A stretch of DNA of 64,000 nt from Podarcis vaucheri (taxonomy: Eukaryota). The stretch is from assembly GCA_965113315.1 (NCBI GenBank), contig OZ220363.1. One strand, written 5' to 3'. Numbering within the stretch: the first letter of the stretch is position 1; every line of letters begins with the position of its first letter. A program made the position numbers and the translations under genes. Positions 29,701 through 59,400 of this stretch are shown one piece after another. Below the pieces are notes generated by a model that was given only the letters and a program-made list of their open reading frames with translations, was not told the DNA's origin and did no database searches.

Positions 29701-32700
29701 GTTCTCATGGATTGCCATTTTGGAACACACACACCCCAAGATAATGGGAGGAAATAACTACACCAGCTCCAAACTGGCATAGTTGATGAGCCTGATCCAG
29801 GGTCCTCGAAAAAGAATGAAGGGCTTGTACCCCAGCAGATCCAATGCTGTTTCTGATTTGCCCTCAAAATGCCCACTTTCAGTGCTTAGACTGGCTACTG
29901 CTGGTGAAAACACCACCAGCTAAGTCTAAACCAACAGAGTATTCTGTGGGCATCAGAATGGCCTCCATGATGGGCATGTCCCCCTGCTGATGGAGAGGAA
30001 GGACCACCCAAACGTAGCCCTGTCCAGCCAGTGGATTTGGGGGTCAGGATTGTTCTGTTAGTCATAACAGACAGAATTTTCATTTGAACAATGAAAGTAT
30101 AATAGGATACATATGGATAAACAGTATATGAAACAAACGTTAAATACAAAACATCCACATTTATAACTATGCGTGCTTTGGTAGCATTGGTCTGGTGATC
30201 AATTTTGTTTAAGATGTTATCAGACTGTAAAATGATAAAAGGCTTAGGTTTCGGTCTATTTTAAAGCAATAGTTTACACACATTTTGTTTCTTCCCTTCC
30301 CTCTGTGTTTTTGCTGCAGTTCCTGCTAAGATCCACTTGCCTAAAAATCTTGAAGGCATGGGAGCCGTTCACGCTCTCCGTGGTGAAGTCATCAGCATCA
30401 AAATCCCATTCAGTGGCAAGCCTGATCCAGTGATCACATGGCAGAAAGGGCAAGATCTTATTGATACTAATGGACACTACCAAGTTATCGTGACACGGTC
30501 ATTCACATCTCTTGTTTTCCCTAATGGTGTGGACAGGAAAGATGCAGGCTTCTACATTGTCTGTGCGAAAAACAGATTTGGCATCGATCAGAAAACAGTT
30601 GAATTAGATGTCGCTGATGTTCCTGATCCCCCAAGAGGACTGAAAGCAAGCGAGGTTTCAAGGGACTCGGTCAACCTGACATGGAATGCTCCAGCAAATG
30701 ATGGCGGAAGCCGAGTCACACACTATACTGTTGAGAAACGCGCTACCACAGCTGAGAGATGGATTCGTGTTGGCCAGGCTCGTGACACTCGATACACTGT
30801 GATAAACCTATTTGGCAAGACAAGCTATGTATTCCGTGTTATAGCAGAGAATAAATTTGGACAAAGCCAGCCTTCTGAACCTACAGATTCTGTAATAACA
30901 AAGGAAGATAAGACCAGAACAGTCAATTATGATGAAGAAGTTGATGAGGCCAGAGAAGTCACTACAGCAAAAGCAGCTCACTCTAATACAAAAGAACTCT
31001 ATGACAGATATATGATTGCTGAAGAACTTGGGCGGGGACAATTTGGAATTGCCCACAGATGTGTTGAGATAGTTTCAAAGAAGACTTACCTGGCCAAGTT
31101 TGTCAAAGTAAAAGGTGCTGATCAAGTGCTCGTAAAGAAAGAAATCTCCATCCTCAACATTGCTAGGCATAGAAATATCTTACAGCTTCATGAATCATTT
31201 GAAAGCCTGGAAGAACTTATCATGATCTCTGAGTTCATATCTGGAGTTGACATCTTTGAAAGACTTAATACTCCTGCATTTGAACTTAATGAAAGAGAAA
31301 TTATAAGCTATGTACGTCAAGTATGTGAAGCACTTGAATTCCTGCACAGTCATAGCATTGGTCACTTTGATATCAGGCCAGAGAACATCATCTATTTCAC
31401 AAGAAGAAGCTCCATAGTTAAAATCATTGAATTTGGTCAGGCAAGGCAGCTGAAACCTGGTGATAATTTCAGACTCCAGTTTACTTCTCCTGAATATTAT
31501 GCGCCTGAAGTCCATCAGCATGATATGGTCAACACAGCCACGGATATGTGGTCACTTGGAACCCTAGTGTATGTACTTCTAAGCGGCCTGAATCCTTTCA
31601 TTGCTGAAACAAACCAACAAACAATTGAAAACATCATAAGTGCTGAATACAATTTTGATGAAGAAGCCTTCAAAGATATCAGTATTGAGGCCTTGGACTT
31701 TGTTGACCGCCTGCTAGTAAAAGAAAGGAGAGCTCGCATGACTGCTACTGAAGCCCTTGAACATGCTTGGCTGAAGCAAAGGACAGAGAAAACAAGCACC
31801 AAAGTTATCAAAACACTGAGACACAGACGTTATTATCAAACACTGGTGAAGAAGGAATGGAACACAGTTGTGTCAGCGGCCCGTGTTGCATGGGGTGGTG
31901 CAGTCAGATCCCAGAAGGCCGTTACAGTTGCTAAAGTTAAAGTGGCATCAATTGACATTGGACCCATTACTGGGCAGATAATGCATGCTGTTGGAGAAGA
32001 AGGCGGGCATGCCAAGTATGTCTGCAAGATTGAAAACTATGATTCATCCACAGAAGTAACCTGGTACTTTGGAGTCAGACAATTGGAGAACAGTGAAAAA
32101 CATGAGATCAGCTACCATGAAGGAGTGGCCACAATGTATGTCAAAGACATTGCTAAATCAGACGACAGTACCTACAGGTGCAAAGTTACAAATGACTATG
32201 GTGAAGACAGTTCCTACGCAGAACTATTTGTTAAAGGTGTGAGAGAAGTTTCTGACTTTTACAGACGCAGAACTGTCAGGAGAGTGAAGCGCCGAGTAGA
32301 TACCTTGAGACTTTTGGAGAAGCCACCAGAATTTACGCTGCCTTTATACAACCGTACTGCCTACGTTGGTGAAAATGTCAGTTTTGGAGTAACAATAACA
32401 GTTCACCCGGAACCTCGTGTAACGTGGTTCAGATCAGGTCAGAAGATCAAACCAGGAGATGATGACAGGAAGTATACCTTTGAAACTGATAAGGGTCTTT
32501 ATCAGCTTCTTATCCATAATGTCAATGAAGATGATGATGCTGAATATACTGTGCTGGCTCGCAACAAATACGGCGAGGACAGCTGCAAAGCTAAGTTAAC
32601 CGTTGTTCAGCACGCTCCTCCAGAGGCTACCACGATGAGACCCATGTTCAAAAGACTACTGGCAAATGCAGAATGCCAAGAAGGCCAGAGTATCTGCTTT

Positions 32701-35700
32701 GAGATAAGAGTATCTGGAATACCAAAACCAGCACTAAAATGGGAAAAGGATGGACAGCCCTTATCAGCTAGTCCAAATATTGAAATTGTACATGAAGGAT
32801 TAGATTACTATGCTTTGCATGTCAGAGATACTTTACCAGAAGACAGTGGTTATTACAGAGTTACTGCTACAAACAGTGCTGGGTCAACAAGTTGCCAGGC
32901 TTACCTGAAGGTAGAACGCTCAAAATATATCAAGCGTCAATACAAGAGTGAAGAAGAGCGGCAAAAGCACGTACAGAAAAGCATTGACAAGACAGTGAGA
33001 ATGGCAGAAATCCTTTCTAGAACAGAATCTGTCCCATTGACAGATGTAGCACAGGAAGCTCTCAGACAAGCTGCTATCCTGTATAAACCAGCTGTAAGCA
33101 CTAAGACTGTCAAAGGTGAATTTGAACTTAAAAAAGAAGAAATTAAAGAAGAAAGGAGACTGCGGATGCCTTATGAGATCCCAGAGCCTCGCAGACGTGC
33201 AGCCGCTACTCTGGAAGAAGATCAGAACATCAAACTGTTTGTGCCTATGTCAGACATGAAGTGGTACAAGAAGCTGAGAGACCAATATGAAATGCCAGGG
33301 AAACTTGATAGAATTGTTCAGAAGCGACCAAAGCGCATTCGCCTTTCCAGATGGGAACAGTTCTATGTGATGCCACTGCCACGCATTACTGATCAGTATA
33401 AACCTAAGTGGCGCATACCCAAATTGTCACAAGATGATCTCGAGACCGTCAGGCCAGCACGCCGGCGTACACCATCTCCTGATTATGAATTTTATTACCG
33501 ACCAAGAAGACGATCACTCAGTGACCTGTCAGATGAAGAACTGCTGCTACCAGTTGATGATTATTTAGCCATGAAGAGAACTGAAGAAGAAAGACTGCGA
33601 CTTGAAGAAGAACTGGAGTTGGGCTTTTCTGCATCACCTCCAAGCAGAAGCCCTCCACGCTTTGAACTGTCTTCTCTCCATTACACGGCAGCAGATGCTC
33701 ATATTGCCACAGAGGAATCTAGGCAAAGAGAGCTGAGGTATGGCACTTATCACATACCCTCTAAAGAAGATACCGCTGCATCTTATGCACAGCTCCGGCA
33801 ACGCCATGACAGAGCAATTTATAGACCACCAAAACAAAAACAGAGAATTATGTCTGAGAAAGAGGATGAAGAGCTGCTGCGACCAGTAAAAACAACCCGC
33901 CGGCTTGCTGAATACAAGAGTGAGCTTGAGTATATGTCACAAGAAGAAAAGAGCCGACTGAGAAGAAGGAGAGAGAGAGAAATAACTGAGGTCAGATCAG
34001 AAGAGGAAGAGGAAGAAATAGAAATGGTGAGGCACGTTCACAGGGAATTTTCTCCTCCCTCAAGATTACTAGGAAGAAGGCGCTCTCTTTCTCCAACTTA
34101 CATTGAATTAATGCGTCCTGTGTCTGAATTAATTCGACCCCGATCACACCCTGTGGAAGAAACGGAGAGAAGATCTCCTACCCCAGAGAGAACACGGCCA
34201 CGCTCACCAAGCCCAGTGTCTAGTGAGAGATCTCTCTCACGATTTGAGAGGACAGCAAGATTTGATATATTTTCCAGGTATGAATCCATGAAAGCTGCTT
34301 TGAAAACCCAAAAAACAATGGAACGGAAATATGAAGTTCTGACTCAAGAACCTTTCACTCTGGATCATGCCCCACGCATAACTCTGAGAATGCGCTCACA
34401 TCGTGTACCGTGTAACACCAACACCAGATTCATTTTGAATGTCCAGTCCAAACCAACTGCTGAAGTGAAATGGTATCACAATGGTGTTGAAATTCAGGAA
34501 AGCCATAAGATTCATTTCACTAATACTAGTGGCGTATTAACCTTGGAGATTCTTGATTGCCATATTGATGATAGTGGTACATACCGTGCTGTGTGCACAA
34601 ATTATAAAGGAGAGTGTTCTGACTATGCAACATTAGATGTTACAGGAGGAGACTACACTACATATACCTCCCAGCGAAGAGATGAGGAAGTACCAAGATC
34701 TATTGTACCAGACTTGACAAGGACTGCAGCATATGCAATCTCCTCATTTAAGAAAGTCTCTGAAACAGAAGCAAGTTCTTCAATAAGAGCAAGCAAATCA
34801 GAACTGACAGAAACCAGAGAATCGCTATCATCATATGAGCACCATGCTTCTGCTGAAATGAGAGTCAGTGCTTCAGAGGAGAAATCACTGGAAGAAAGAG
34901 CTGTTCATCGGAAGTTTAAGACCACTCTGCCTGCAACAATATTAACAAAGCCACGGTCAATCACTGTCTCTGAAGGGGAGACTGCAAGATTTTCTTGTGA
35001 CATTGATGGTGAACCAACACCAACTGTAACATGGATCCGTGCAAGTCAAGCTATTGTTTCTTCTGGACGTTTCCAAGTAACACGTACGCAGTATAAATCT
35101 ACCTTTGAAATTTCATCTGTCCAGACCTCAGATGAAGGAAGTTACACTGTTGTGGTAGAAAATTCTGAAGGAAGACAGGAAGCCCACTTTAGTTTGACTG
35201 TACAAAGGAAAAGGGTCCCAGAAAAAGCAATTACATCACCCCCAAGGGTCAAATCTCCTGAGCCTCATGTGAAGTCCCCAGACAGAGTAAAATCTCCCAA
35301 GCGAGTAAAATCCCCTGAACCATCTCCTGCACACTCTAAAGCCAAGTCAACACCTGCAGGTAAAACAACACCATCAGAGAAAGCAGACTTGCCTGTTGCT
35401 GCTCCCCCTAAGATAAAACAACAGCTGAAAGTGGAAGCTTCTGGGGACAAAGCAAAATTCTTCTGTTCAGTTGAAAGCAGTGTTTTGAGTGTCCAAGAAG
35501 TAGCCTGGTACAAAGATGGCAAGAAACTAAAAGAGGATGATCATTTCAAATTGCATTATGCAGCTGATGGAACATATGAACTTAAAATCCATAACCTCAA
35601 GGAATCTGATCAAGGTGAATATACCTGTGAGATTATTGGGGAAGGTGGCGCCTCCAAAACCAACTTTCAGTTTGTTGGCCAAGCTTTTAAAAGTATTCAT

Positions 35701-37957
35701 TCTCAGGTGTCAAGCTTAAGCAAAACTCAAAAATCAGTTCAGAAAGAGTCTGAAATACCTGAGGTATCTGCCCAGAAAAAATCTGCAATGACTTCTCAAG
35801 AAAAGGCAGTGGTTGAAGAAGAATATGTTAAAAAGTCTCTTGTGTCTGATGAAGCTAAAACATCTTACACAGAAGTTAAATCTACTACCACTAAAATGAC
35901 TGTGTCTGAAGGTCAAAAATCTACCCTTAAAGCCAGTATTGCTGGTGCTTCTAATGTAAAATGGTTACTGAATGGAATAGAGCTAACTAACTCTGAAGAT
36001 TATAGGTATGGTGTATCAGGAAGTGATCATACTCTAACTATCCAAAAAGTGACCCAGAAAGATGAAGGAATAGTTACCTGTGAAGGAAAGACTGAACAGG
36101 GTATCATCAAATGTCACTTTGAAATGAGTCTTTCAAAAGATCAATCAAATGCCCCAGCCTTTATCATACAACCAAAATCTCAAAACATCAATGAAGGACA
36201 AGATGTGTTGCTTACCTGTGAAGTTTCTGGAGATCCTTCCCCTGAAATCCACTGGTTTAAAGATAACCAGCCAGTAAGTAATTACTTATGTCAGCCTTGA
36301 AATTAAATGACCCATTCATAACCCTGAGTATAACTTGATCTTAACAAAGTATCTCTTTCATTATCAGATTGCTCTCTCATCCAACATCCGAGTAAATCGC
36401 TCCAAGAATGTTTATTCTCTTGCAATCCAAAATGCTGCAGTGAGTGATAGTGGAAAATACACAGTCAAAGCGAAAAACTTCCATGGGCAGTGTTCTGCAA
36501 CAGCATCTCTGACTGTCCTTCGTAAGTTTTTTTAAGTCTTGTCTTAATATGAGTAGGGCTTCTACAATATGGCAAAAGCAGTTGATTGTTTTGATTCTTT
36601 GAAAAGCTGTTAGTTTCATTACTGAACCTAAAATGCAATATACATTATAATTACAAAATACTGAATTTAAAATATATGTACTTATATGTTTCTCACCCGC
36701 TCAGTGTTACCAGAAGGCTTTGAACATCTTGCTATTAACCCGTTGGTTCCAGTGATCACTATTTAATAAACTATCAGAATAATTAATGCCCAAAGGGTTA
36801 GTTCTCTGGATTTTTTTCTTACGTTTCATTAAACTTCTCAGATACAAACTTGCTGCGTTTTAAAATCATCTGGATACCAGGAGCCAACGGGTTTCTCTGT
36901 GTTTTGCTGTTGATGTATGTATGTGCTTGTGTTTAAGGAAAACAGCAGTGTTTTTTTTATGGTGGTGTAGTAGTTTTAATGGCAGAATACCTGCCGAGTT
37001 ACGTAAAGTAAGAAGGGAAAACAAAACACCATCCAAAGGGGCTGTATCTCAACAGCATGCATATTAAAATGAAATTATTATTATTCTTATTATTATTATT
37101 ATTACATGATTACAACGAAATTCTGTTTTCCTTAAACAGCAAGCCAGTCTCTTTCTCCATCCATAAAGTATATATATTTAAGTCACATGGCTTACCAGTC
37201 AACGTGATGTCATTGGTTTTTCCGTTCTATGTTTGCTATTGTCCACAGCTCTAATTGAAGAACCTCCAAAAGAGGTAGTGTTGAGAACAAGTGGTGATGC
37301 AAGCATGCAGGAAAGTTTCTCTTCGCAGTCATTTCAAATGTCCGCTTCTAAACAAGAAGCTTCGTTCAGCAGTAGCAGCATGAGTGAGATGAAATTTGCA
37401 AGCATGTCTGCCAAAAGCATGTCCTCCATGCAAGAATCCTTTGTAGAGATGAGTTCCAGCAGTATAATGGGGAAATCTAGTCTGACCCAACTGGAGAGTT
37501 CTTCTAGTAGAATGCTTAAATCTGGTATGAGAGGTGAGCAATACTATTATACGTAGAGTTAGAAAAACACCACAATATCCTAGATATGTAGAATTAGTCA
37601 TTATAGTAGAACTTCAGTTTCCGCTAAGAACTAACTTGATTTTTCCCCTTCCCATTTTGCAAAGGAATACCACCCAAAATTGAAGCTCTTCCAAATGATA
37701 TTTCCATTGAGGAAGGAAAGGTTCTCACCATATCCTGTGCCTTCACTGGTGAACCTACTCCTGACATAACATGGTCCTGCAAAGGGAAAAGCATTTCTAG
37801 TCAAGGTGGTAGATTCCACGTTGAAACCAGTGAAGACTTAACCACTCTTATCATCATGGATGTTCAAAAGGACGACGGGGGACTTTATACACTGAATTTA
37901 GGAAATGATTTTGGCACTGACTCTGCCACTGTGAATATTAACATTCGATCAATTTAA
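2..37957 (+). CDS. TTN: Titin (connectin), 3' part of the multi-exon CDS: A-band C-zone and P-zone, kinase and M-band; 5'-partial, 36 coding exons in window
   Basis: Fn3/Ig super-repeats (PGPP...W..P..DGGS.I..Y.VEKR), titin kinase with EFG motif, KSP repeats, C-terminus ...TVNINIRSI*. All exons join in frame through GT-AG sites. Confidence 0.99.
8978..9058 (+). mobile_element. Short LINE (L2-like) 3' end
   Basis: agagtggctgcggaaacccagccagatgggcggggtataaat + (att)n tail, shared with ~45305-45375 and 21905-21985 (reverse). Confidence 0.6.
9191..9487 (+). CDS. TTN: TTN A-band exon (Fn3), 297 bp
   Basis: ttctcag|AAAAACC...CTAG|gtatgt; phase 1-1. Confidence 0.95.
9800..10387 (+). CDS. TTN: TTN A-band exon (Ig+Fn3), 588 bp
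   Basis: tttcag|AATCT...TACA|gtaagt. Confidence 0.95.
10472..10774 (+). CDS. TTN: TTN A-band exon (Fn3), 303 bp
   Basis: tttag|CACCC...TGTG|gtatgt. Confidence 0.95.
10905..11201 (+). CDS. TTN: TTN A-band exon (Fn3), 297 bp
   Basis: tgcag|AGCCG...TATG|gtaaga. Confidence 0.95.
11454..11741 (+). CDS. TTN: TTN A-band exon (Ig), 288 bp
   Basis: ttaag|GTGCA...CTTG|gtatgt. Confidence 0.93.
11845..12144 (+). CDS. TTN: TTN A-band exon (Fn3), 300 bp
   Basis: acag|ATAAA...TTTG|gtaagt. Confidence 0.95.
12249..12551 (+). CDS. TTN: TTN A-band exon (Fn3), 303 bp
   Basis: tgcag|TTACA...ATAG|gtaaga. Confidence 0.95.
12699..13004 (+). CDS. TTN: TTN A-band exon (Fn3), 306 bp
   Basis: tgcag|AAAAA...CTTG|gtatgt. 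Confidence 0.95.
13112..14878 (+). CDS. TTN: TTN A-band exon (Ig-Fn3-Fn3-Ig-Fn3-Fn3), 1767 bp
   Basis: tgcag|AGGAG...GTAG|gtaagt. Confidence 0.95.
14977..15273 (+). CDS. TTN: TTN A-band exon (Fn3), 297 bp
   Basis: ttcag|ATCCA...GCCG|gtaagc. Confidence 0.95.
15445..16157. mobile_element. Older hAT-like non-autonomous element hosting the MITE
   Basis: Termini caggagtaggcaac / gcttcctcatccctg; degenerate 8-bp TSD ctgtaaat / ctgcaaaa; similar ends to the element at ~61064. Confidence 0.5.
15906..16041. mobile_element. hAT-type MITE, 136 bp, hairpin-forming
   Basis: Perfect 8-bp TSD cacttgag (15898-15905 / 16042-16049); long imperfect inverted arms. Confidence 0.88.
16378..16665 (+). CDS. TTN: TTN A-band exon (Ig), 288 bp
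   Basis: tttag|TTGCG...CACG|gtaact. Confidence 0.94.
16768..17067 (+). CDS. TTN: TTN A-band exon (Fn3), 300 bp
   Basis: tacag|ATACC...TATA|gtaagt. Confidence 0.95.
17158..19224 (+). CDS. TTN: TTN A-band exon (7 domains), 2067 bp
   Basis: tgcag|CTGTC...TTTG|gtaagt. Confidence 0.95.
19340..19642 (+). CDS. TTN: TTN A-band exon (Fn3), 303 bp
   Basis: gttag|TCCCA...GTTG|gtaagt. Confidence 0.95.
19732..20037 (+). CDS. TTN: TTN A-band exon (Fn3), 306 bp
   Basis: tacag|ATCCA...TACT|gtaaga. Confidence 0.95.
20136..20426 (+). CDS. TTN: TTN A-band exon (Ig), 291 bp
   Basis: catag|CACCG...CTTG|gtgagt. Confidence 0.95.
20547..20846 (+). CDS. TTN: TTN A-band exon (Fn3; resembles human A150/Fn3-119, the HMERF domain), 300 bp
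   Basis: aatag|ATTCG...TTCA|gtaagt; EKCTLAW..PQEDGGAEITHY...RLNWVIVE...NKYGPGVP. Confidence 0.93.
20969..21274 (+). CDS. TTN: TTN A-band exon (Fn3), 306 bp
   Basis: tacag|CTATC...TCAT|gtaagt. Confidence 0.95.
21447..21810 (-). mobile_element. CR1 LINE 3' fragment
   Basis: tagaatcatagaa tail; minus-strand remnant reads LTGDMIAIFKYLK (CR1 ORF2 C-terminus). Confidence 0.8.
21905..22103 (-). mobile_element. L2-like LINE 3' fragment with (AAT)n tail
   Basis: Reverse complement closely matches the 3' end of the element at 44868-45375. Confidence 0.7.
22395..22700 (+). CDS. TTN: TTN A-band exon (Fn3), 306 bp
   Basis: caaag|ATACT...CTAG|gtaatg. Confidence 0.94.
22810..23091 (+). CDS. TTN: TTN A-band exon (Ig), 282 bp
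   Basis: tatag|AAATA...TATG|gtaagt. Confidence 0.94.
23299..23892 (+). CDS. TTN: TTN A-band exon (Fn3-Fn3), 594 bp
   Basis: cacag|ATACC...AAAG|gtaaga. Confidence 0.95.
24002..24289 (+). CDS. TTN: TTN A-band exon (Ig), 288 bp
   Basis: tttag|TTCTA...CTGG|gtaaga. Confidence 0.94.
24410..24709 (+). CDS. TTN: TTN A-band exon (Fn3), 300 bp
   Basis: cacag|ACAAA...ATTA|gtaagt. Confidence 0.95.
24929..25231 (+). CDS. TTN: TTN A-band exon (Fn3), 303 bp
   Basis: tgtag|GTGTT...ATTG|gtaaat. Confidence 0.94.
25383..25685 (+). CDS. TTN: TTN A-band exon (Fn3), 303 bp
   Basis: ttcag|CTCCT...CTTG|gtaaga. Confidence 0.95.
25777..26361 (+). CDS. TTN: TTN A-band exon (Ig+Fn3), 585 bp
   Basis: cccag|AATTC...TTGA|gtaagt. 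Confidence 0.95.
26410..26697 (-). mobile_element. Old MIR/Squam3-like SINE with an inserted short hairpin element (~26533-26615)
   Basis: cctgtgaggaaggttagg...tgactgcccaa core and ...aatactcttaactgctatgcca head. Confidence 0.55.
26733..27038 (+). CDS. TTN: TTN A-band exon (Fn3), 306 bp
   Basis: aacag|ATCCT...TTTG|gtatgt. Confidence 0.95.
27139..27438 (+). CDS. TTN: TTN A-band exon (Fn3), 300 bp; missing from the ORF track
   Basis: tgcag|ACAAA...ACAT|gtacgt; encodes KPSQPGEIEITSISKDSITLEWERPECDGGKEI... Confidence 0.93.
27794..28369 (+). CDS. TTN: TTN P-zone exon (Ig-Ig), 576 bp
   Basis: tatag|CTGGA...CAAG|gtatgt. Confidence 0.95.
28453..28758 (+). CDS. TTN: TTN P-zone exon (Fn3), 306 bp
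   Basis: tgtag|ATAAA...TTTG|gtaagt. Confidence 0.95.
28853..29446 (+). CDS. TTN: TTN P-zone exon (Fn3 + Ig A168), 594 bp
   Basis: tacag|AAAAG...GAAG|gtaaga. Confidence 0.95.
30320..36273 (+). CDS. TTN: TTN large M-band exon, 5954 bp: A169-A170, titin kinase, M1-M6, M8 and first half of M9 (covers the region of human Mex1-Mex3)
   Basis: tgcag|TTCCT...GCCA|gtaagt; one open frame containing GRGQFG, HFDIRPEN, IEFG, four KSP motifs; phase-0 3' end. Confidence 0.96.
36368..36521 (+). CDS. TTN: TTN Mex4-equivalent exon (second half of M9), 154 bp
   Basis: atcag|ATTGC...CTTC|gtaagt. Confidence 0.95.
37249..37533 (+). CDS. TTN: TTN Mex5-equivalent exon (Ser-rich is7), 285 bp, symmetric and skippable in frame
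   Basis: cacag|CTCTA...AGAG|gtgagc; LIEEPPKEVVLRTSGD...MKFASMSA. Confidence 0.95.
37665..37957 (+). CDS. TTN: TTN terminal coding exon Mex6 (Ig M10) with stop codon
   Basis: caaag|GAATA...; GIPPKIEALPNDISIEEGK...TVNINIRSI-TAA (37955-37957). Confidence 0.97.
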
Positions 37958-38985
37958 AAGCTTGATCTTTTTTATTTTTTGGCACTTGACTTTTGGCAAG
38001 TGATTCATATGGACTGAAATAATTGATCTGTAAATATATATTTTAAAAAATATTTTTGTACCTACCTGAACCAGACAAAGTCCAAGGATAGACGCTATGA
38101 CTTATAGTCATTATTATTTGACTTTAAAACAATTTTTCATTTGACATGTACATACTGTATATAGCCGCAGATAACGGTTATGGAGCTTTGTACCATTTAT
38201 TTTATGACATTTTAAAATGTAACTTTTGGAACAAACCGTTGGTAGGAGAAAGTTTCTTAGGGAACGAATACCCTGCTCAACATTTAACTAATTTTTGTGC
38301 CTCAACAAAATGTTGATGTCTAAGAATGCCTCAACAGGTAGAGAGGCTCCCTGTTGAAGACTTATTTTACCGACACCTAAGAGATGATGCTGTGCACGGT
38401 TTCATTATACGTGCACGAATTTATTTTGAATCAGAGACATAAGGCATTGGTGAGGTTTGCAAATACCCTCCTGTAAGCCACACTTTAATATCTTATGTTA
38501 CATCTGATCGACGTCAAAACTATATTTTGTTCATGACTGACTCGCAATACCTTGAACAAAGTGCAAGCGGCCAGCATTTTGTTCAGCACCTATCGTATTG
38601 TTTCTGACACGCCAACTACCCAAATAGCTTTCCAATAAAGTAACATCACCTGGCCATCCCGTTAAAAAAAAAAAAGCCATTTGGGTACTTGAGTGCAGAA
38701 ACAGTACCAACTCTTGGAGGTTCCTAGGATGCAGTGATTGTGTGGTAGCAATTAGGATTTTGGCTAGATACTGTCAACTGCAGGCAACTAAGATTTGAAC
38801 CACAGTTTAAGAAAAGCTAAAACTGTTGTTATAACATCACATCTTGCCCTGAACTTAGGAAAAAAAATGAATTAGTTTTATTTTATGTAGTAGTAAGTTG
38901 TTCGGTTAGCTGTTTTGTTGAACCTCCTCGAGATAGTATTGTTCATTTGAAATAAAGCATGCTACCTGCACCTCATCAAGTGTAT
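37958..38985 (+). other. TTN: TTN 3'UTR (~1 kb; end approximate)
   Basis: AT-rich, repeat-free stretch from the stop to AATAAA at 38951 and a following GT/T-rich element. Confidence 0.7.
38951..38956 (+). terminator. Probable main TTN polyadenylation signal
   Basis: AATAAA followed ~25-60 nt later by gtgtatgtttctggtctttgtgtg...tttattttt. Confidence 0.7.
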
Positions 38986-42521: not shown

Positions 42522-43851
42522 GAACACTTACATTTTAAAAGAAAGCTTCTTCTTTTTTTAACATTTTTATAAAAGTGCTCCATGGCCAAGACATAATATA
42601 CCAAGTTTATCCCAAAGTGAATACAAAAACAAAGAATTTACATTTCAAAACACTAACAACTTTGGGCTCAATTCGTCAGAAATTTCTGTGCAAACCTTGC
42701 TGAAATTTAAGCTGCTTTTCCCCCTTTTGCTTTTTGCAAGGACAGCCTGTGCAAGAAAGGTTTCTGACAAACTGGGCCCAAAATATATGGTAGGTGGTGG
42801 CTAAGTTACATGGTTCATTCTCTGGTTCAGAGTGTGTTTCTCGGCTCAATTAGAAATGAATTCGTATTTGTCATTCAAGTTAACTGAGAGGAGAATATTG
42901 CTGTACAAGTATGCTCTTCTGAAGTTATTGGGCTCACAATGATAAAAGCCACCCTCCCCCTTTGGTATAAATAGATCATAAATAAATGTACAGCTGCAGC
43001 TATGAATACGTTACAACAGCATCTCAAGAGCATATTTTAGAAACTGGAGCTAAAATAACACTTTGGTAAAAAGACACATCAAGGATATCTTGCTGTTTAG
43101 CGAAAAGGAGGGGCAGAATCCAGCCAAAGTCAAGTATTTCTTAGTCCCATGTGCTTTACATATTCTTCAACTGAAATCAAGTGCACACTTTGGGTTGGAT
43201 CATGTCCCACGATTTTTAAAAAACAATGCTATTTAGTAATGGAACACACCTCAGCGACGATTAAGCACATCTCACCCCCCAACCCCACCCCAGTATTGAC
43301 AAGGAGGCATTTTGTGGTGCAAAAAGGAATAAATACATCAAAACGTTAAAATACCTTTACCCCATGTATAATGCCTCGGAAATCAGATAATTTATATGAC
43401 TATTTAGAAAAATACTTCACATCTAACACTTTTTTTAATTGGCTAGACTTTGGGTGCAAGCCAGAGAAATGCAGGTGTTCTGAGTCCAAGAAAAGAAAAG
43501 GCACAAGAAAGGAACAGGAAAGGAAAGAGAAAAGGATGGAATTTAAGAATTTAGAGCAAGATTCTGCCAAACCTAAGCAAGCTACAATCTCATTGGTTTC
43601 ATTCTCATTAAAACCAAGAGGGCTTCAGAGGGCTTAATTTTGGCTGGAACATGCCCTGAGACTATACTCAAGTGTCACTAATTCCAACCAGACGGAAGAG
43701 ATCCAAGTTGCAGAGATGATGCCCTTATGTACACCACGGTTTTTAAGAAGGGGAAAATATTAAATTACCAATAAACCATGTTTTAGGAATACCATCTCAG
43801 TCTAAATGTGAGAAAAAGCATCCCCTGGCATGAAAGGTGCAACCACGAGCC

Positions 43852-43902
<51 letters not shown>
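43852..43902 (+). repeat. (AAT)~17 microsatellite inside the probable PLEKHA3 3'UTR
   Basis: Perfect trinucleotide run. Confidence 0.97.
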
Positions 43903-43903
<1 letters not shown>

Positions 43904-44350
43904 GGTAGCACTGCCACTCAATTCAATAGAAAGTGAACTGTGTGCAAGAATAGGATATTGTACCAGCAAAGCAACGATGTGTTCAAGTGAGCAGTCCGGT
44001 CTATGGCACAAGTTTTCCCTATCCCAATGTAAAACTTTTTTTTTTTTTTTGTCAAGGCTCTAAACGACCATCACACTTTGTAAAAAGGAGGGCTACATTT
44101 GTAAAGGTACATTACCTATCCGTCGAACCATAATTTGTTTCAAAAATGCACAAACTGAAGGTTGTAGGAAAATATTCTTGCAAATAAACTATATAAAGAT
44201 AAAATACGCTTTGAAGTTAGTTTTTACATTATTCTATAAAGTGCAGAGAAATCCTTCACACAGGGAACGAACTACCCCCCTACGACAACAGGAGAAGTAC
44301 AGCAGCTTTTGCATAGCATTACTTAGAGAAAGGTGATTCCGTTCAGTTCT

Positions 44351-50400: not shown

Positions 50401-53400
50401 ACTGCAAGCTTGTGTAGCATTCTTCTTGGCTTGTATTTTAGACTGACTCTGATGAACATTCAGCATTTGGGTAAAGCATTATCCTTGACTACTGGCAACG
50501 CTGCCTGGGGCTGATGGTGTCCCAACAGCCTCTGAAGGGGCCACAGATTTCATATCCCTGCTGTAAAGGCAGACAGAGATATAAAAGTAGGCCAAAACTC
50601 CGCTGGCGTTTCTGTTGTGGTGTATCAATTTTCTCTGGTGCAACGGAAGAAGAAGAAGAAGAAGAAGAGTTTGGATTTGATATCCCGCCTTTCACTCCCC
50701 TTCAGGAGTCTCAAAGCGGCTAACATTCTCCTTTCCCTTCCTCCCCCACAACAAACACTCTGTGAGGTGAGTGGGGCTGAGAGACTTCAAGGAAGTGTGA
50801 CTGGCCCAAGGTCACCCAGCAGCTGCATGTGGAGGAGCAGAGACGCGAACCCGGTTCCCCAGATTACAAGACTACCGCTCTTAACCACTACACCACACTG
50901 GCATTTTGGATGAGCATTTTCATTTGCGAATGCCAAGGACCTGAAATTCCTGCTAACCAGGGTGGATAAAAAATAAATAAATTGGATTTTTAAAATTTAA
51001 ATCGGATTTTTAAAATAAAATGCTTTTGAAGGAAAAATCTTTCTAGTTTTCTATTTAAGTTACATGCAAGTCGAAAGACTATTCATCAGGAAATAAGGAT
51101 CTGTTTAAGTTTTTCATGTGTACTTAGTCTAAGTTTTTTTTTTTTTTTAAGATATTTAACCACAACAGTTAGCAAACATGGCTATACATGCTATAATGTT
51201 ATTGTTTTAGTTAAATAAATTGTTTAAATTGTTCTTAAGGGAATGTTTATCTTTCTCCTTCCAATAAAGTGCAGCAGAAAAGCTGTCCAAATATAAAGTT
51301 AACTTATTAAACCTCACAATAATTTCATAATTATCGCTGTATGTATTTCAAATAGTATAACCAAATCAGTAATTTCTGATATAACTGTAAAAACTACTCT
51401 GGAAATTGATTGTTCCAAAAATAAAGCCCTCATCTGATTGTAAATATTAAGATGATACCAGCAAGAATGAGTCTTTCTGTAAAAAAAAAAAATTAAATCA
51501 AGTCTTACTGACTAGTGATTTAAAGTGTGATTTAAATCAAATCCAACTTGCTGCTAACTGTGCAGTCCTATACAAGTCTACTCAGAAGCAATCTCTCTTG
51601 AGTTCAATGGGACTTGCTCCCAGGCAAATGGGTACAGGACTGCAGCCTCTGTTTCACACCCACTGTTTCAACAATCCGGTGCTGTTTCGCTATTTTCACC
51701 TAATGCCATTTTACCAATTGTTGCTGCTCTTTCTGCTTGTTTTTTGCCTGCCTTTTGCAATTAAGTTTTCTACTATTTATTTTGCTGTTTCATATTGATC
51801 TCTGTGGGTAATTTTATTTGTGCAGGCCCCTTTCAGTAGGCCTGGAGATAAAAGAGTGATGTGTTTTTTATATTTATCTAAACACTTACATGCTGCCCCA
51901 TAACAAAGTTCTGTGGGTGACTCACAATAAGTAAGTCAAAAAACAATCTGAATAGGAAGTCATAAAATCAAAAGCAACCTAAATACAACAGGAAAACAAA
52001 AACACACCAACAACTCCAATGTTAAAAACACAGTTTTAAAAAGAAGAAGAAGAGTTTGGATTTGATACCCCGCCTTTCACTCCCTTTAAGGAGTCTGAAA
52101 GCGGCTAACATTCTCCTTTCCCCTTCCTCCCCCACAACAAACACTCTGTGAGGTGAGTGGGGCTGAGAGACTTCAGAGAAGTGTGACTGGCCCAAGGTCA
52201 CCCAGCAGCTGCATGTGGAAGAGCGGAGATGCGAACCCGGTTCCCCAGATTACATGACTACCACTCTTAACCACTACACCACACTGTGAAGACCAGGCTA
52301 AATAGGCCATTTAACATATACATAAACCAAAAGTAATTATTGAAACTAAAGACTTGTATTTGGGCCCTACTGGACAAAGTAGTGGGTCCACCTTAATGCT
52401 GATGCTTCTCCTCCCAATCCAAAACAAATAATATTAATTTAAAAAATGATCTGATACCTCAATGCTGGGTGACAGGTGATTTTCATCATGGTGAACGTAT
52501 TCTTGAATTGTATGGACCTGCTGCATTAGAAGGTCGCAGTAGAGACGAAGCTCAGACATTTTGGTTTTCAGAGATTCATTGGTTTCATTAACTTCTGCAA
52601 GGACATTAGGAAGCAGAAACTTCACTGGTCAGGTATGTAATTTCCCGTGACAAGTTTTAAGATGTAGGCATTTACAGTGGTACCTTGGTTCTCAAAACGC
52701 TGTGGTCTAAACCACAGAGCCTAGGGATTGCTGATCAGAAGGTCGGCGGTTCGAATCCCCGCGACAGGGTGAGCTCCCGTTGCTCTGTCCCAGTTCCTGC
52801 CCACCTAGCAGTTCGAAAGCACGTCAAGTGCAAGTAGATAAATAGGTACCGCTCTAAAGGGAAGTTCTCTCTCTGCACACAACTGTCGCATTATGGGAAA
52901 GTATTGCTTCTTTTCTCTTGCATTCTGGGAAGTCTTGCTTCTAAGCTTTGTTTTGCTCACGCTGCATAAACTGTGCTGATGCTAAGACATTCCATCATCA
53001 CCCTGGTACGTTCTGTTCACCTTGAGTTCACACCATATCAATCTGTACTTACCCCTCCTTGTACATTCCTTTTTCGTACCACTCTGGTACGGGCAGTCCG
53101 AACCCATGCCTGTGTAAACTCCGCGTTCCTTTTCCCAACCTTTAACCTGTCTATGACTAATGTCTTATATGCAATAATTAATGTCTTGTATGCAACCCTT
53201 GTTTTGAACTTATGTTAACCAATCAGCAACAAGCACACGTGGCAAACGCAGTAATATTCAATAAAAGGGAGTCTCCGAGGTTTGCTCAAGAGACGCCTCC
53301 CGTATGACACCTACCTGCTCGTCTGTCGCTCATTTTCAACCCAACCGGTTGGGAAGGTAAACAGTGTTTCCATGCACTGCTCTGGTTTCACCAGAAGCGG

Positions 53401-56400
53401 CTTAGTCATGCTGGCCACATGACCCGGAAGCTGTATGCCGGCTCCCTTGGCCAATAAAGCGAGATGAGCACCACAACCCCAGAGTCGTTCGTGACTGGAC
53501 TTAACTGTCAGGGGTCCTTTACCTTTACAGTGATTATTGCTTTCATTTTATGGCTCAAAGGTCTCATTAAATAGTAAGATTCATGTTAAATTGCAGTTTT
53601 AGGGGTTGTTTTTAAAAGTCTGGAACAGATTAATCCGTTTTGCATTACTTTCTATGGGAAAGCGCGCCTTGGTTTTGGAATGCTTTGGTTTTGGAACGGA
53701 CTAAGTTTGAGAACCAAGGTACCACTGTATATTCCTTTAAACAAAAGGAATGTCTGACTTTTATTAGTAGTAGTAGTAGTTACATTTGTTAGTCGCTTTA
53801 TACAACAACAACAACAACAACAAATGTCTCCAAGTGACTTGACTTAAGATAAAATACAAACAGGAGCCAGGGCCAATGAGCCAACTAATTTTTGCTCTGT
53901 CCCCATCCTCCTCCTATGATGGCAACACTGAGACTAAGGAGAAGGAAGCTGGTCGCCAGGACCACTGTCTAGACTGGATGTAAATAAGAAGATAGGCAGG
54001 TAAGGGTTGGCTAAGGGCAGACTGAGGTAGCTGGGGCAGGGCCCTATCCGCCCTAACAGACCAGCCTCCACACACCGTGAGCAGGGCCCATCTTGTCTTT
54101 TAATATCTCTAGGGTGCTTAGAAAATACTATGGGCTTTGCTAGCGTTAAGAAATAATAATGTAAGGAGCTGTAAACCTCAAAACCCCTCAAAAGTGTGCT
54201 ACCTACTGCCATAAATAATTACTTTACATTTGCTGGGCATTTGACCGATAACTACAATAGTTAAAAACCAGGTGTTTTTAATAGGTTGCTTTTTCTTTTT
54301 ATAAAAAAGAAAGTATGAGTACCTTTTTCTTTTTTTGTTCTGGTGTCTGCCAAGCAGGCTTTCGAGCTCCCCAGAGCTACCAGCCACCGCTGTCGTTCAG
54401 CTGCATTAACGGCTTTCATGTAGAAATGCTGTTCCCCTGGGATGATTAACTCCATCCTGGTGCTGTCGGTCGGATGAACTTGCGACAGGGGCGAGATAAA
54501 TTAGAAGAACAGATTTTTCAAAGACTGCATGGAGTTACGTTAGTACTTCCCAGTTACGACTGTCCTGCTTCTAATATCTTGCCACTGTGATCCATGCGAC
54601 TGTCACCTCCAGGCTTGATTATGGTAACACGCTCTACGCGGGGCTGCCCTTGAAGCTGACCCAGAAACTCCAGTGGGTGCAGGTGGGTGCAGAATGGCGC
54701 GGCGAGACTCCTTAAGGAGTCCTCGCCGTGGGATCACATTCACCCGGTGCTATACCAGCTGCACTGGCTCCTGGTGGAGTACAGGATCAGGTTTAAGGTG
54801 CTGGTTTTAACGTTTAAAGCCCTCTACGGCCTAGGACCCTCGTACCTACAGGGCCGCCTCTCCTGGTATGCCCCACAGAGGATGTTATGGTCAGCAAATA
54901 ATAACATTTTATAGGTCCCGAGCCTCAAGATTAGACCCGGCCAGGTGGAACACTCTGTCACAAGAGACCAGGGCCCTGCAGGATTTGACATCTTTCCACA
55001 GGGCCTGCAAGATGGAGCTGTTCCACCAGGCCTTTGGTTAGGGTTCAGTCTGACTCCCTCTCCCCTTTCATAAGAACTTGCATGAAAGTGGCCTCCCAAT
55101 TTTTCTCACAGGCCCATATAAGTTCAGCACAAACAGTTGGGCCTGGTAAGCATTTAAGGTCCCCAACCCTAATCTGCAGGTTGCCAACTGATTGGATTTT
55201 ATTCTGATCCTGATCTGATTTTAGGATGTATTTTAATTGATTGCCTGATTTTATGTTAATGTGTTATACATTTGATGTTAGCTGCTCTGAGTCTGGTTTT
55301 GGCTGGGGAGGGCCAAAATCAATATTATTATTATTATCATCATCATCATCATCATCTAGTATATCAATCCAGCATACTGTTCTCACAGCAGCCAACCAGG
55401 TGCCTTTGAGGAAATCTGCAAGCAAAACCTGAGCACAATAGGGATCTCCCCATGGGCAATTCCAAGCAATTGCCTCTGACAGTGGAGGTAGAATATAGCC
55501 ATTGGGTGGAATTCAATGTTGCAGTCTTCCAATCCCATGTGGATAGCTCAGTTGGTTACAGCATGGTGCTGGTAACACCAAGGTTGCAGGTTCGATCCAC
55601 AGGGTCCCTTCCAACTCTACAGTTCTAGGATTCTATATCCCAATTGATCCAGCAGCACAAGCATTCTAGCCTGCCAGATGGAACAATACCCTCTCCCCTG
55701 CACTATTCTGGGGGGGTTCTCCCACCCCAGAAGCCTATTTTGGGGGGGGGGGCAAAGAGGGGGAAAGCCCCATTGAAAAAGCAGAGGTCCATGCACAGGG
55801 TGGTTAGGTGAATCCTGCCCATTGCATATCCACTGTTAGTCATACTCAGCATAGACCCATTGAAATTAAGGGACCTGACTAATCTAGGTTCATGAATTCC
55901 AATGGTCTACTCTGAGTGGCACTACCACCAGATGTAACCCACAGTTTTTCACCTGAGTTAAGGAAAATAAAGGCAGCAGAGCCTCTCTGGGTGATTCTGG
56001 AGAACAGCGGGGTGACATTGGGCAAGAAAGAGGAGGGAGGAAAACCCAAAAAAACGAAGGAGCAAAGGGAGAACCCGACCCTCAATTACTGGACCTGTGA
56101 CTATATACAGTAATAACATTTGTACTTGTACTAGGCGACAAGCTGATGCTTGAAATAATCGGCTTATTTTGCAAAGACTGCCTAGCTGGACTGGGCGATA
56201 TATCCTCCAAAACTGGTTTGAAGTTCATATTGTGATACCGGTTTCAGAGTTTTTGACCTGGCAATATATTGCGAATCATTATGTATGTGCGTGCGCGCAA
56301 AAATCACAATGTGGTAAAAACTGTGAAGCCAGCCAATGCCACTACACAGCTCCATCCTTATTTCAGAAGTTGTGATATATCGGTATATTACGATGTTTAG

Positions 56401-59400
56401 CTGGCGATATATTGCAATACTGGAAACCAGATATCGCCCAGCCCTACTGCTCACGTTAGATACCTAGCCTAGAAGGTAAGGAGAGTTTTCTTACTGAGAG
56501 AGCCTACCTTTGATTTCACACACTGCCATCTTTATGCTGCCTTTGCTGCCTTTGCAAACATCATCCTGCGAATCGTAGTAAGACAATATCCCGTTATCAA
56601 GAACAAACCAGCGAGGCTGCCAGCCTAGGGAAACAGTGCAAACAGAAAAAAACAACATTAATCTGCTTTGTTTCAAAATGCAATTATCACACGCAAGCAA
56701 CAGCACCGTTCCTCAGCTTAGACCCTTAGTTGTAAGCAAGATTTAAGTCTGTTTATGTAATGATCAAAATCAAAACAGACAACACACATTAATAACATAC
56801 AAATACGAATCGACATTTCCCAGACTTTGCCAGCTCTGTCAAAGTCCCGTACTATTTTTAAAAACTCATGAAATTGGGCATGGAGTTGGGCAATGTTCCC
56901 CCAATGTAGCTCTAATGAACAAAGCTGTGGAATCTCTTTAGATCAGCATTTGGAGTGGGGAGTGGAATTGGCATATACAGTGGAACTTAATCCGTTCCGG
57001 GAACCCGTTCGACTCCCGAATCCATTTGCAAACCAAGGAGCAGCTTCCTATTGGCTGCAGGAGCTTCCTGCATTCAAGCGGAAGCCGCGTCGGATGTCCA
57101 GCTTCCCAAAAACGTTCGCAAACTGGTATACTTACTTCCAGGTTTGCACCGTTCGGGGGCCGATTTGCTCGGGAACTAAGCCATTCGGGAACCAAGGTTT
57201 GACTGTACACAAGCAGGAAGCCTTGTTTGGATGAAAACTGAACCAGTTTAATCAGCAGACTAATTAATGTGTTCATTAATCAATGGGAGGAAAAAAATTA
57301 ATCAATAGGGCACACTTTGGGGCGTGTGTCTCTTTTTATTCCGACATGCAAAAATGCCACCCTGTGTTGAAAATACAATATTTAATGTGTACTGTATTTT
57401 TTTTAAGTGATTTATCATGAGACATAGATCTGTAATTAGTAGACAACCCTAGCAATATGCTGAAGTCCCTGATCACAAATGCAGAGAGTGGAGGGACAGA
57501 ATCTGAGTGTGACCTTTTTCCCCACTGGCAAGGGGCAGGTAGTTGAGTACTGTAGTGCTTTAAACAACAAAAAGATCAAGAGGGAGATGTAAAGGATGCT
57601 TACTGTGTAGATTTCACAGCTCTGTGCCTGTTAATTCATGCACAACAAAGCTGATAAGGAAAAAGGATAGCTCACATTTACCAGCTGCTTTTAGGAGCAT
57701 ATGAGATTAAATCTGTAAGTGCATTTAAAGCACTAAGCCGACACATCTGCCTCGCAAGTCACTGATATCTCCACCTAAAGGAAGGCTCTATGAATCTGGT
57801 ATGACAGCCTGTCTGAACAATACAATGCTACAAGTGTACATTTGGCACTGGAGGAGAAAATGCACAGTTACTACAAGGAAACCCAATCTTATAAGCAAGA
57901 ACTGTCCGCATTACAGCCGAGTGTTTTGTCCTCCATGTGTTCCAACCAGTCAAGATCTATTCATGGGAACGATGACATTCCTGAAGGAAAGCACATAGGT
58001 GAGTATCACTACAGATCATAAAAAACCCTAAATCTGGTGCACGCCACAGCGCAACAGACACTATTTCCCAGTGGAGTGTTTTTTGCCACCTGCAAATGTG
58101 CTTTGGTCAAAACGGTATGAGGAAATATGATAAAGAATGTATGGGTTAATGATCCAAGACAGATCAATTCGCAAGTTCAAAAAGACAGACCTTGCTATCT
58201 AAGCCTATTGCAGGAATTTGAACTTGATTCAAGTTGAGCAGAATGAGAAAGGAACTGCAGAATTAAACAAATTAATCAATCAATCAATCAATCAATCAAT
58301 CTTTATTACGGTCCAGAGACCCAACAAATCATTACAAATCAATACACAATTCATACAGCCTACCTCCAGGTTAATCAAGCATTTTGTTTAGAATATAGGG
58401 CTCATTTGTTCTTGCAACCACCGATAAAAACTTTGCCACTGCTAACGTTCTAGCATTTGTCCTGTCTTCCAGTAGGAACCTGACATAGTGAGCCTCTGAT
58501 TTTCCCGGGAAAGGTACCAGCAAGGGTATTAAACAAAGTCAGTGGTGCTGCAGTTAAGGTAGAGACCCGATGAAGCAGCTTATGGAACTCATATGGGATC
58601 TGCTGCAACAACAGCCTTGTTGTTCTGGCAAGTAAGAAAGCCTTTTCAACAAAATAAAAGGAAACAGCATCCTTTGCTGTCCCAGTGGCCAGCCCTGTAG
58701 AACAAACTGGAACCAACGAATAAATCAAATAAAATCCTCATGAGTTGGTGGAATCATTTATTCAATGATTCATTCTATTATCTATTATCTCTTTATGCTT
58801 TAAAGTGCAAATGTATTTTCAGCATGTATTTCACTTGTATACTCCTTTAAATTAATAACCTACTCAAGAAAATTTCCGTAGAGTGTTCTCTCTTATCTCA
58901 TTGCACAACGTTTGTACACCCAGTCCTTATCTAGCAAATGTTGGTTACAGACACAGCTTCTTCAGAAAGGCCCAAAAATTATTAAAGTAAAAAACAACAA
59001 CACCTCAGTATGTACCAGTTTGGGATTAACAGATCTATTTTCTGCCTCGGTCAATTTTGCACGTGTTTGTTCCATAGTCTGGCTCTGTCCATTTCTACAT
59101 TAATCTGCAACTTTTTTCCATTCAGAAATTAATATTTAAATGTGTATTTTAAATATGCACTTAAGTATATACCTTATCACAATATGCATATTTACCGTAT
59201 TTTTCGCTCTATAACACGCACCCGACCATAACACGCACATAGTTTGTAGAGGAGGAAAATCCGTAGGCATGCCACCAGTAGGCATTCCCTCCATAACACG
59301 CACAGACATTTCCCCTTACTTTCTAGGAGGAAAAAAGTGAGTGTTATGGTGCAAAAAATACGGTAAATACCTATTTTTATTTCAGTGTTACATTTCTAAA

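What the first reader, a model, noticed from the sequence alone, without database searches (positions are those of the whole stretch)
35680..35900. Titin M-band lacks Ig domain M7; Mex1, Mex2 and Mex3 are one exon
Seen: one uninterrupted exon (30320-36273) runs from M6 (...GGASKTNFQFVGQAFKSIH) through only ~65 low-complexity residues (SQVSSLSKTQKSVQKESEIPEVSAQKKS...) into M8 (MTVSEGQKSTLKASIAGASNVKW). Known (recalled): human titin has Ig M7 (SKPVIVTGLQDTT...SSSCKLTIK) here, split over Mex1/Mex2 with two introns, plus a longer is6. Neither M7 nor those introns is present, and the nearby introns (94 and 727 bp) show no Ig-coding sequence. The junction falls near 35745. Inference: a clean in-frame genomic deletion in this lineage, or a mammalian gain, giving a 9-Ig M-band about 170 aa shorter. 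This could change M-band geometry. The rest of the exon layout matches the human pattern, so the difference stands out.
Basis: partly seen in the sequence, partly recalled or inferred. Interest (0 to 1): 0.8.

Follow-up and report, generated by a model that had tools for sequence, protein, structure and literature searches.

The report
Lizard titin lacks Ig domain M7
This lizard's titin gene lacks the M-band domain M7 and the two introns around it, but so do the birds, turtles, snake, other lizards and frogs I could check, while mammals and some fish keep M7, so this is an old inherited deletion and not a peculiarity of this genome.

Summary
Window 30320-36273 (+) is one uninterrupted exon. 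It encodes titin's last A-band Ig and Fn3, the kinase, M1-M6, a 65-residue low-complexity linker (35701-35895), M8 and the first half of M9. Three more exons follow: the rest of M9, then is7, then M10. That gives nine M-band Ig domains, not ten. No M7-like sequence lies anywhere in the 64 kb.

- The source is a lacertid lizard, 99% identical to Podarcis muralis titin over the parts compared.
- The same M6-linker-M8 layout, with a 65-66 residue spacing, occurs in a gecko, a cobra, two turtles and many birds. Anolis, Varanus and tuatara models carry the same linker-to-M8 sequence. Frogs have 48-49 residues.
- M7 is not a mammalian gain. Teleosts (Fundulus, Electrophorus, Maylandia and one unnamed fish) carry a clear M7 orthologue at the same place, split by an intron at the same point as in mammals.
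- M7 is therefore ancestral. It was most likely lost once in the sauropsid stem and separately in frogs and some fish.
- The longer is5 and is6 of mammals are mammalian expansions.

Public gene models already show the nine-domain form. I found no paper that describes it for sauropsids. Interest is modest.

The parts
30320..36273 (+). One exon, equivalent to mammalian Mex1 fused to Mex3. It encodes the last A-band Ig and Fn3, titin kinase, M1-M6, the linker, M8 and the first half of M9.
   Evidence: Open frame; acceptor and donor sites; Pfam Fn3, Pkinase and nine I-set stretches.
31009..31773 (+). Titin kinase domain.
   Evidence: Pfam Pkinase, residues 230-484 of the exon translation, E 1.4e-55.
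35392..35700 (+). Ig domain M6, ending ...FVGQAFKSIH.
   Evidence: Coordinates; aligned to M6 of mammals, birds and frogs; confident Ig fold in the AlphaFold2 model.
35701..35895 (+). 65-residue linker made of the start of is5 joined directly to is6. This is where M7 and two introns lie in mammals and teleosts.
   Evidence: Alignment; composition; pLDDT below 50 for model residues 108-162.
35737..35766 (+). Interval that holds the deletion junction (VQKESEIPEV). This stretch aligns both with the continuation of is5 and with the first residues of Mex3.
   Evidence: DNA read; alignments. The exact breakpoint cannot be resolved.
35896..36138 (+). Ig domain M8.
   Evidence: Aligned to mammalian M8; Ig fold in the model.
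36151..36273 (+). First half of Ig domain M9, ending at the GTAAGT donor.
36368..36521 (+). Exon for the second half of M9 (the Mex4 equivalent), after a 94-bp intron.
   Evidence: Pfam I-set positions 44-90; splice sites; 51/51 residues identical to Podarcis muralis.
37249..37533 (+). Exon for is7 (the Mex5 equivalent), after a 727-bp intron.
   Evidence: Translation; splice sites; no Pfam family.
37665..37957 (+). Last coding exon: Ig domain M10 and the TAA stop (the Mex6 equivalent), after a 131-bp intron.
   Evidence: Pfam I-set E 9.4e-21; splice site and stop; 96/96 residues identical to Podarcis muralis.

Best explanation
The window holds the 3' end of the titin gene of a lacertid lizard very close to Podarcis muralis. 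Its M-band region has nine Ig domains. An old in-frame genomic deletion removed most of is5, the whole of M7, and the two introns that in mammals and teleosts split M7 and separate it from is6. The deletion joined the Mex1 and Mex3 equivalents into one exon. M7 and its introns are ancestral, because bony fish and mammals share them. The deletion most likely happened once in the stem of Sauropsida. Similar, separate deletions occurred in frogs and in some fish titin copies. The result is a titin whose M6 and M8 are joined by a 65-residue linker predicted to be unstructured, in place of roughly 235-260 residues that include a folded domain. Shown here: the absence of M7, its taxonomic spread, the orthology of fish and mammalian M7, and the intron position inside M7. 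Inferred: a single sauropsid event, the deletion mechanism, and any effect on M-band geometry. M7 is evidently dispensable for a working sarcomere.
For: Continuous ORF with nine I-set hits. No M7-like sequence in the window. Genomic ORFs of three other squamates (P0001-P0003), a bird cluster (P0006, which reads through the M9 intron and so is genomic) and frogs (P0010, P0009) show M6-linker-M8 in one frame. Annotated proteins of Sphaerodactylus, Naja, Chrysemys, Pelusios, Cuculus and other birds, and Leptobrachium show the same. The M6-to-M8 spacing is 65-66 residues in every sauropsid measured, 48-49 in frogs and 233-259 in mammals. Mammalian Mex1 ORFs from three clusters (whale, rodent/primate, P0020) stop four residues after ...WTKDGK, in the middle of M7, as expected for a GT donor. 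Fundulus M7 is 55% identical (108 bits) to hamster M7, against at most 36% to any other M domain. It matches the solved human M7 structure 3puc at E 8.8e-29. That entry is named as M7 in PMC6922384. The fish ORF P0096 runs from the second half of M7 through a short intron into is6-M8-M9a, which is the same exon plan as in mammals. A tree of M8-M9a follows the species tree with tetrapods monophyletic. The window is 173/175, 51/51 and 96/96 residues identical to Podarcis muralis A0A670I0I1.
Against: No reads could be laid on the junction, so the evidence against an assembly error is comparative only. Crocodilians, salamanders, caecilians, lungfish, coelacanth and monotremes were not sampled. For marsupials only a Vombatus model that starts after M7 was seen. 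The Anolis, Varanus, Podarcis and tuatara models start at or near the junction, so they do not show M6-to-linker continuity themselves. Some fish and frog evidence rests on automatic gene models. The Mex2/Mex3 boundary in mammals was inferred from fish and from my recollection of the mammalian gene, not seen in mammalian DNA here. Breakpoints cannot be fixed because both flanks are K/E/S/T/Q-rich and resemble each other.
Confidence: 0.85

Rival explanations
1. M7 and its two introns are a mammalian gain, and the lizard shows the ancestral nine-domain state.
For: Every non-mammalian tetrapod sampled lacks M7. Before the fish data came in, this was the most parsimonious reading. Mammals did add length to is5 and is6.
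Against: Fundulus, Electrophorus, Maylandia and P0096 carry a domain 55% identical to mammalian M7. It sits between the KSP region or M6 and is6-M8, is split at the same ...KDGK|..QGGKY point, and matches PDB 3puc.
Confidence: 0.04
2. The absence is an assembly collapse or gap-closing artefact in this genome.
For: No reads could be laid. The linker is low-complexity sequence.
Against: The frame is intact and there is no N in the window. The linker is near-identical in the Podarcis muralis protein, 173/175 from the junction onward. The same architecture appears in separately assembled contigs and models of squamates, turtles and birds. Nineteen runs from nine studies and six coded organisms hold half or more of the sampled words of 34900-38000.
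Confidence: 0.02
3. Differential retention of old paralogs: an early vertebrate had one titin copy with M7 and one without. Mammals kept the first, and sauropsids and frogs kept the second.
For: Teleosts have two titin genes, and both M7-bearing and M7-lacking fish sequences were seen.
Against: In the M8-M9a tree the tetrapods form one clade, with mammals inside the amniotes. Fish sequences with and without M7 are intermixed: Fundulus (with M7) is sister to P0016 (without M7) at 99/97 support. This is not the pattern expected for old paralogs.
Confidence: 0.04
4. M7 is still encoded, but elsewhere or as an unrecognised alternative exon.
For: None found. The idea arises only because M-band exons such as Mex5 are alternatively spliced.
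Against: tblastn of M7 against all 64 kb found nothing beyond the known Ig domains. M6, the linker and M8 lie in one open frame, so an M7 exon could be included only by splicing inside that exon.
Confidence: 0.02

Closest known systems
Mammalian titin M-band region (kinase, M1-M10, is1-is7; exons Mex1-Mex6)
   Same: Same gene and same order of kinase, M1-M6, M8, M9, is7 and M10. Same intron inside M9, before is7 and before M10. KSP repeats lie before M6. M8-M10 are highly conserved.
   Different: No M7. No intron inside M7 and none after it. Four M-band exons instead of six. The M6-to-M8 spacing is 65 residues against 233-259. There is no 13-residue is5 repeat and no extra ~50 residues of is6.
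Titin of other sauropsids in public databases (Podarcis muralis A0A670I0I1, Naja naja A0A8C6V297, Chrysemys picta, Pelusios castaneus, Sphaerodactylus townsendi, 'Titin, partial' of many birds)
   Same: The same nine-domain M-band with a 65-66 residue M6-to-M8 linker and a conserved junction sequence ...K(E)xEALKVSTQKK....
   Different: Only small sequence differences. The window is 99% identical to Podarcis muralis over the parts compared.
[quoted passage not shown]
   Same: Loss of individual M-band Ig domains in a vertebrate titin has been published, so the kind of variation is known.
   Different: Different domains and lineages. The teleost sequences seen here keep M8 and M9, some keep M7, and some lack M6. 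The paper does not cover sauropsids or amphibians.

Membership tests
Titin (connectin), C-terminal kinase and M-band region | Ig-Fn3-kinase module followed by a series of I-set Ig domains with unique insertions | tested here: met
   Pfam fn3, Pkinase (E 1.4e-55) and nine I-set stretches in one exon.
Titin (connectin), C-terminal kinase and M-band region | Orthology to annotated titin | tested here: met
   Best hits are clusters named Titin in birds, a frog, and a whale and hamster. The window is 99% identical to the Podarcis muralis model. The tree follows the species tree.
Titin (connectin), C-terminal kinase and M-band region | KSP phosphorylation repeats before M6, and the is7 plus M10 C-terminus ending ...NINIRSI | tested here: met
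   VKSPEP and VKSPKR repeats and the C-terminal exons were read directly.
Ten-Ig M-band architecture as described for human titin | Ten Ig domains M1-M10 after the kinase | tested here: not met
   Nine domains. M7 is absent from the exon and from the whole window.
Six-exon Mex1-Mex6 layout | An intron inside M7 (Mex1/Mex2) and an intron after M7 (Mex2/Mex3) | tested here: not met
   The frame is uninterrupted from M6 to the middle of M9. Mammalian ORFs end in the middle of M7, and the fish ORF P0096 shows the intron after M7.
Six-exon Mex1-Mex6 layout | Introns inside M9, before is7 and before M10 | tested here: met
   GT-AG introns of 94, 727 and 131 bp at the expected points.

The most novel reading that the evidence does not exclude
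The missing block starts about 12 residues into is5 and appears to end, within one or two residues, at the first codon of the Mex3 equivalent. For example, tuatara KETEALKVSTQK aligns with mammalian KDTEAQKVSTQK, which comes right after M7. Comparable fusions arose separately in frogs and at least one fish. This would fit repeated replacement of the genomic segment by a reverse-transcribed, M7-skipping splice form, or repeated slippage between the similar is5 and is6 motifs. It would imply that an M7-less titin isoform existed ancestrally and may still be made in mammals.
Probability: 0.15. Interest if true: 0.55.

Novelty: new variant of a known kind. Interest (0 to 1): 0.3.

Why it matters
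The ten-domain M-band is the textbook layout of titin, and chicken muscle is a classic model for M-band ultrastructure. The sampled birds, turtles, squamates and frogs build working sarcomeres without M7, with a linker about 170-190 residues shorter. This is a natural deletion experiment. It argues that M7 has no indispensable partner and bears on how M7 (Mex1/Mex2) variants in human TTN are read. It also means that epitope maps and models of M-band titin spacing cannot be carried over unchanged from mammals to birds or reptiles. For this genome the feature itself is ordinary.

Tried and rejected
**Steps that failed or were not run**
The junction therefore has no read or RNA check.
The Pfam scan of the is7 exon came before it. 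The local tblastn used the whole window file as subject inside the closed script machine, and no hit fell in those places.
I could not fetch mammalian, fish or frog genomic loci to read the Mex1-Mex3 introns and breakpoints at DNA level.
- The search of protein representatives was not run. It carries no names, and multi-Ig giant proteins would swamp the best 150 hits, as the unrelated giant proteins did.
Exons were handled one by one by reference.
- I fetched no contig that could be human. Mammalian comparisons used hamster, langur and whale proteins.

**Searches that added little**
- The PDB search of M6-M9a gave only generic Ig hits. 3puc (M7) was not among the best 60.
- Five literature searches and seven papers consulted gave no statement on M7 in sauropsids or amphibians. 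The only related remark is the fish note in PMC6922384.
- The taxa of P0009, P0011, P0016 and P0020 could not be named. They were placed only by the tree.

**Readings rejected**
- Mammalian gain of M7, assembly artefact, differential paralog retention, and a hidden M7 exon. See the rival explanations.

Full report
**What is in the window.**
The frame starting at 30322 is open for 1984 codons up to 36273. The exon begins at the acceptor ctgcag| at 30320 and ends at a GTAAGT donor at 36274. Pfam finds an Fn3 domain, a protein kinase domain (E 1.4e-55) and nine I-set Ig stretches in it.

Read in order, the exon encodes:
- the last A-band Ig and Fn3, then titin kinase;
- M1, is1, M2, M3, the long is2, M4, is3 and M5;
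- the KSP repeats and M6, which ends ...FVGQAFKSIH at 35700;
- a 65-residue linker (35701-35895);
- M8 (35896 to about 36138) and the first half of M9, up to 36273.

Downstream lie a 94-bp intron, exon 36368-36521 (second half of M9), a 727-bp intron, exon 37249-37533 (is7), a 131-bp intron and exon 37665-37957 (M10 and the stop).

**Is M7 really missing?**
- A local tblastn of hamster and Fundulus M7 against all 64 kb gave only paralog-level matches to known titin Ig domains: at most 36% identity and 63 bits, with nothing in the introns or beyond the stop codon. True M7 orthologues score 55% identity and 108 bits.
- An AlphaFold2 model of M6-linker-M8, built on an alignment of 11 sequences, shows two confident Ig sandwiches. 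The linker has pLDDT below 50 for model residues 108-162 and no strands.
- The linker has 13 S, 11 K, 9 E, 8 V and 7 T, and no C, G or W. It hides no degenerate Ig domain.

**Whose genome is it, and is this an assembly error?**
From the junction onward the window is 173/175, 51/51 and 96/96 residues identical to the Podarcis muralis protein A0A670I0I1 (P0085) in the three exon parts compared. It groups with that protein in a tree.

I could not lay reads. Nineteen runs from nine studies and six coded organisms hold at least half of the sampled words of 34900-38000. More to the point, separately assembled sequences of many other species show the same architecture, as set out next. An assembly artefact is very unlikely.

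**Taxonomic spread.**
A word search with the M6-M9a part of the exon returned ORFs of about 1900-2100 residues. These are the equivalent exons of other vertebrates.
- Three are squamate-like (P0001-P0003) and one is the gecko Sphaerodactylus (P0004).
- One cluster is avian. Its members are named 'Titin, partial' in Cuculus, Merops, Corvus, Tyto, Aptenodytes and others.
- One cluster is anuran and includes Staurois parvus.
- All of these run M6-linker-M8 in one frame.

A second search with a bird fragment added named models.
- Models that span M6 to M8: Naja naja, Chrysemys and Pelusios (turtles) and Leptobrachium (frog). None has M7.
- Models that start at or near the junction: Anolis, Varanus, Podarcis and Sphenodon. 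They carry the same linker-to-M8 sequence but do not show M6 continuity themselves.

The M6-to-M8 spacing is 65-66 residues in every sauropsid measured, 48-49 in frogs and 233-259 in mammals.

**Mammals.**
Mex1-type ORFs from three mammalian clusters (one with Balaenoptera, one with Cricetulus and Pygathrix, and P0020) continue from M6 through is5 into ...KPVIVTGLQD...WTKDGK. They stop four residues later, after a V, as expected for a GT donor in the middle of M7. Spliced hamster and langur proteins show the whole M7, a long is6, and then M8.

**Polarity.**
At this stage a mammalian gain looked the most parsimonious reading. The fish data overturned it.
- Electrophorus (P0092), Fundulus (P0094) and Maylandia (P0095) models, and a genomic ORF of an unnamed fish (P0096), contain a domain just before is6-M8.
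- That domain is 55% identical over its full length to hamster M7 (108 bits), against at most 36% to any other M domain.
- It matches the crystal structure of human M7 (3puc) at E 8.8e-29. PMC6922384 names 3puc as titin M7.
- P0096 reads from the second half of M7 through a short intron into is6-M8-M9a. The spliced fish models join ...KDG(K/R) to ..SQGGKY at the same point where the mammalian ORFs end. The exon plan with M7 split in two is therefore shared by teleosts and mammals.

M7 is ancestral to bony vertebrates, and its absence in sauropsids and frogs is a loss. On the accepted phylogeny, with amphibians outside amniotes and mammals sister to sauropsids, the frog and sauropsid losses must be separate events. 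The constant 65-66 residue linker and the conserved junction sequence in birds, turtles and lepidosaurs point to a single loss in the sauropsid stem.

A tree of M8-M9a follows the species tree. Tetrapods are monophyletic, and fish sequences with and without M7 are intermixed. This argues against differential retention of old paralogs. Some fish copies have their own losses: P0016 lacks M6 and M7 in one open frame, Arapaima P0091 has the end of M6 but no M7, and Fundulus lacks M6.

**The junction.**
The first 12 linker residues (SQVSSLSKTQKS) align with the start of mammalian is5 (EQVSSISETKRS in hamster). What follows aligns with the sequence right after M7 in mammals, without gaps in sauropsids generally. 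Turtle VEKEAEALKISTQKK and tuatara KETEALKVSTQK align with mammalian AVKDTEAQKVSTQKT.

In fish the intron after M7 lies directly after the last strand. By homology, the 3' edge of the missing block falls within a residue or two of the start of the Mex3 equivalent.

The same residues can also be aligned, less well, with the continuation of is5 (STQKTAES...). I therefore place the junction only within 35737-35766.

Mammalian is5 carries one to five copies of a 13-residue repeat (AQKTAESTETKK-like), so this region is prone to slippage. Fish is6 is as short as sauropsid is6. The long is6 of mammals is thus a mammalian expansion, not a sauropsid reduction.

**Mechanism.**
Shown: an in-frame loss of coding sequence and two introns that fused two exons. 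Inferred: either a plain genomic deletion, perhaps helped by the similar K/E/S/T/Q motifs on both sides, or replacement by a reverse-transcribed splice form that skipped M7. The apparent match of the 3' edge with an exon start hints at the second, but I cannot test it here.

**Function.**
Inference only. One Ig domain of about 4 nm and more than 70 linker residues are missing between M6 and M8. I know of no M7-specific binding partner, but I did not check this systematically in the papers. The successful sarcomeres of the sampled birds, reptiles and frogs show that M7 is dispensable.

**Novelty.**
The nine-domain form is already present in public gene models of many sauropsids, so the data are not new. 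In five literature searches and seven papers consulted, I found no statement about M7 in sauropsids or amphibians. [quoted passage not shown] A 2025 paper gives ten Ig domains as the M-band composition and calls the shark A-band region almost identical in domain structure to human. I rate this a new, undescribed variant of a known architecture. It is of modest interest and is ordinary for this genome.

**Limits.**
- No read or RNA evidence for the junction.
- No genomic loci of other species.
- Crocodilians, non-anuran amphibians, lobe-finned fish, cartilaginous fish and monotremes were not sampled. For marsupials only a model that starts after M7 was seen.
- Several comparisons rest on automatic gene models.
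- Exons were never joined into a spliced protein for a search.
- No contig that might be human was fetched or compared.

Noticed in passing
window 52434-62491, minus strand: Exon-like ORFs of a PH-domain gene that converges on titin's 3' end. They include [11 protein letters not shown]... at 62491 and ...[22 protein letters not shown]... at 56491-56706 (Pfam PH, E 4e-06). From memory this looks like PLEKHA3, the neighbour of TTN in mammals.
   Followed up: partly
P0084 (Sphenodon), P0080 (Nothoprocta), P0085 (Podarcis), P0087 (Varanus); window about 35740-35750: Several short UniProt/Ensembl models of sauropsid titin splice from different upstream points (kinase, is2, is3) into an acceptor at or next to the M7-deletion junction (...|KETEALKVSTQKK, ...|SEILEVSAQKK). 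This could be a surviving Mex3 acceptor used inside the fused exon, or an artefact of model building.
   Followed up: no
P0049, P0017, P0058, P0077, P0057, P0020 (mammalian is5): Mammalian is5 holds a 13-residue repeat (AQKTAESTETKK-like) in 1 to 5 copies depending on the species. Is5 length runs from 35 residues in the langur to 87 in the fin whale.
   Followed up: partly
P0094 (Fundulus), P0016, P0091 (Arapaima), P0092 (Electrophorus): Teleost titin copies differ in their M-band domains. Fundulus goes from the KSP region straight to M7 with no M6. P0016 lacks both M6 and M7 in one open frame. Arapaima has the end of M6 but no M7. All keep M8 and M9. This does not fit the published remark that M7-M9 are missing in zebrafish and salmon, unless that remark concerns another copy or incomplete models.
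   Followed up: partly
P0006 (bird genomic ORF): In a bird the short intron inside M9 has no stop codon in frame, so the ORF reads through it (...NNQPVSISLTRSLENLEFF...QIAISSH...) and is 2090 residues long.
   Followed up: no
The tool says its filter also trips by chance. This exon is highly conserved between lizard and mammal proteins.
   Followed up: no
window 43783-44063: A long trinucleotide microsatellite, which reads as runs of Y, L or N in different frames, lies in the intergenic DNA downstream of titin.
   Followed up: no
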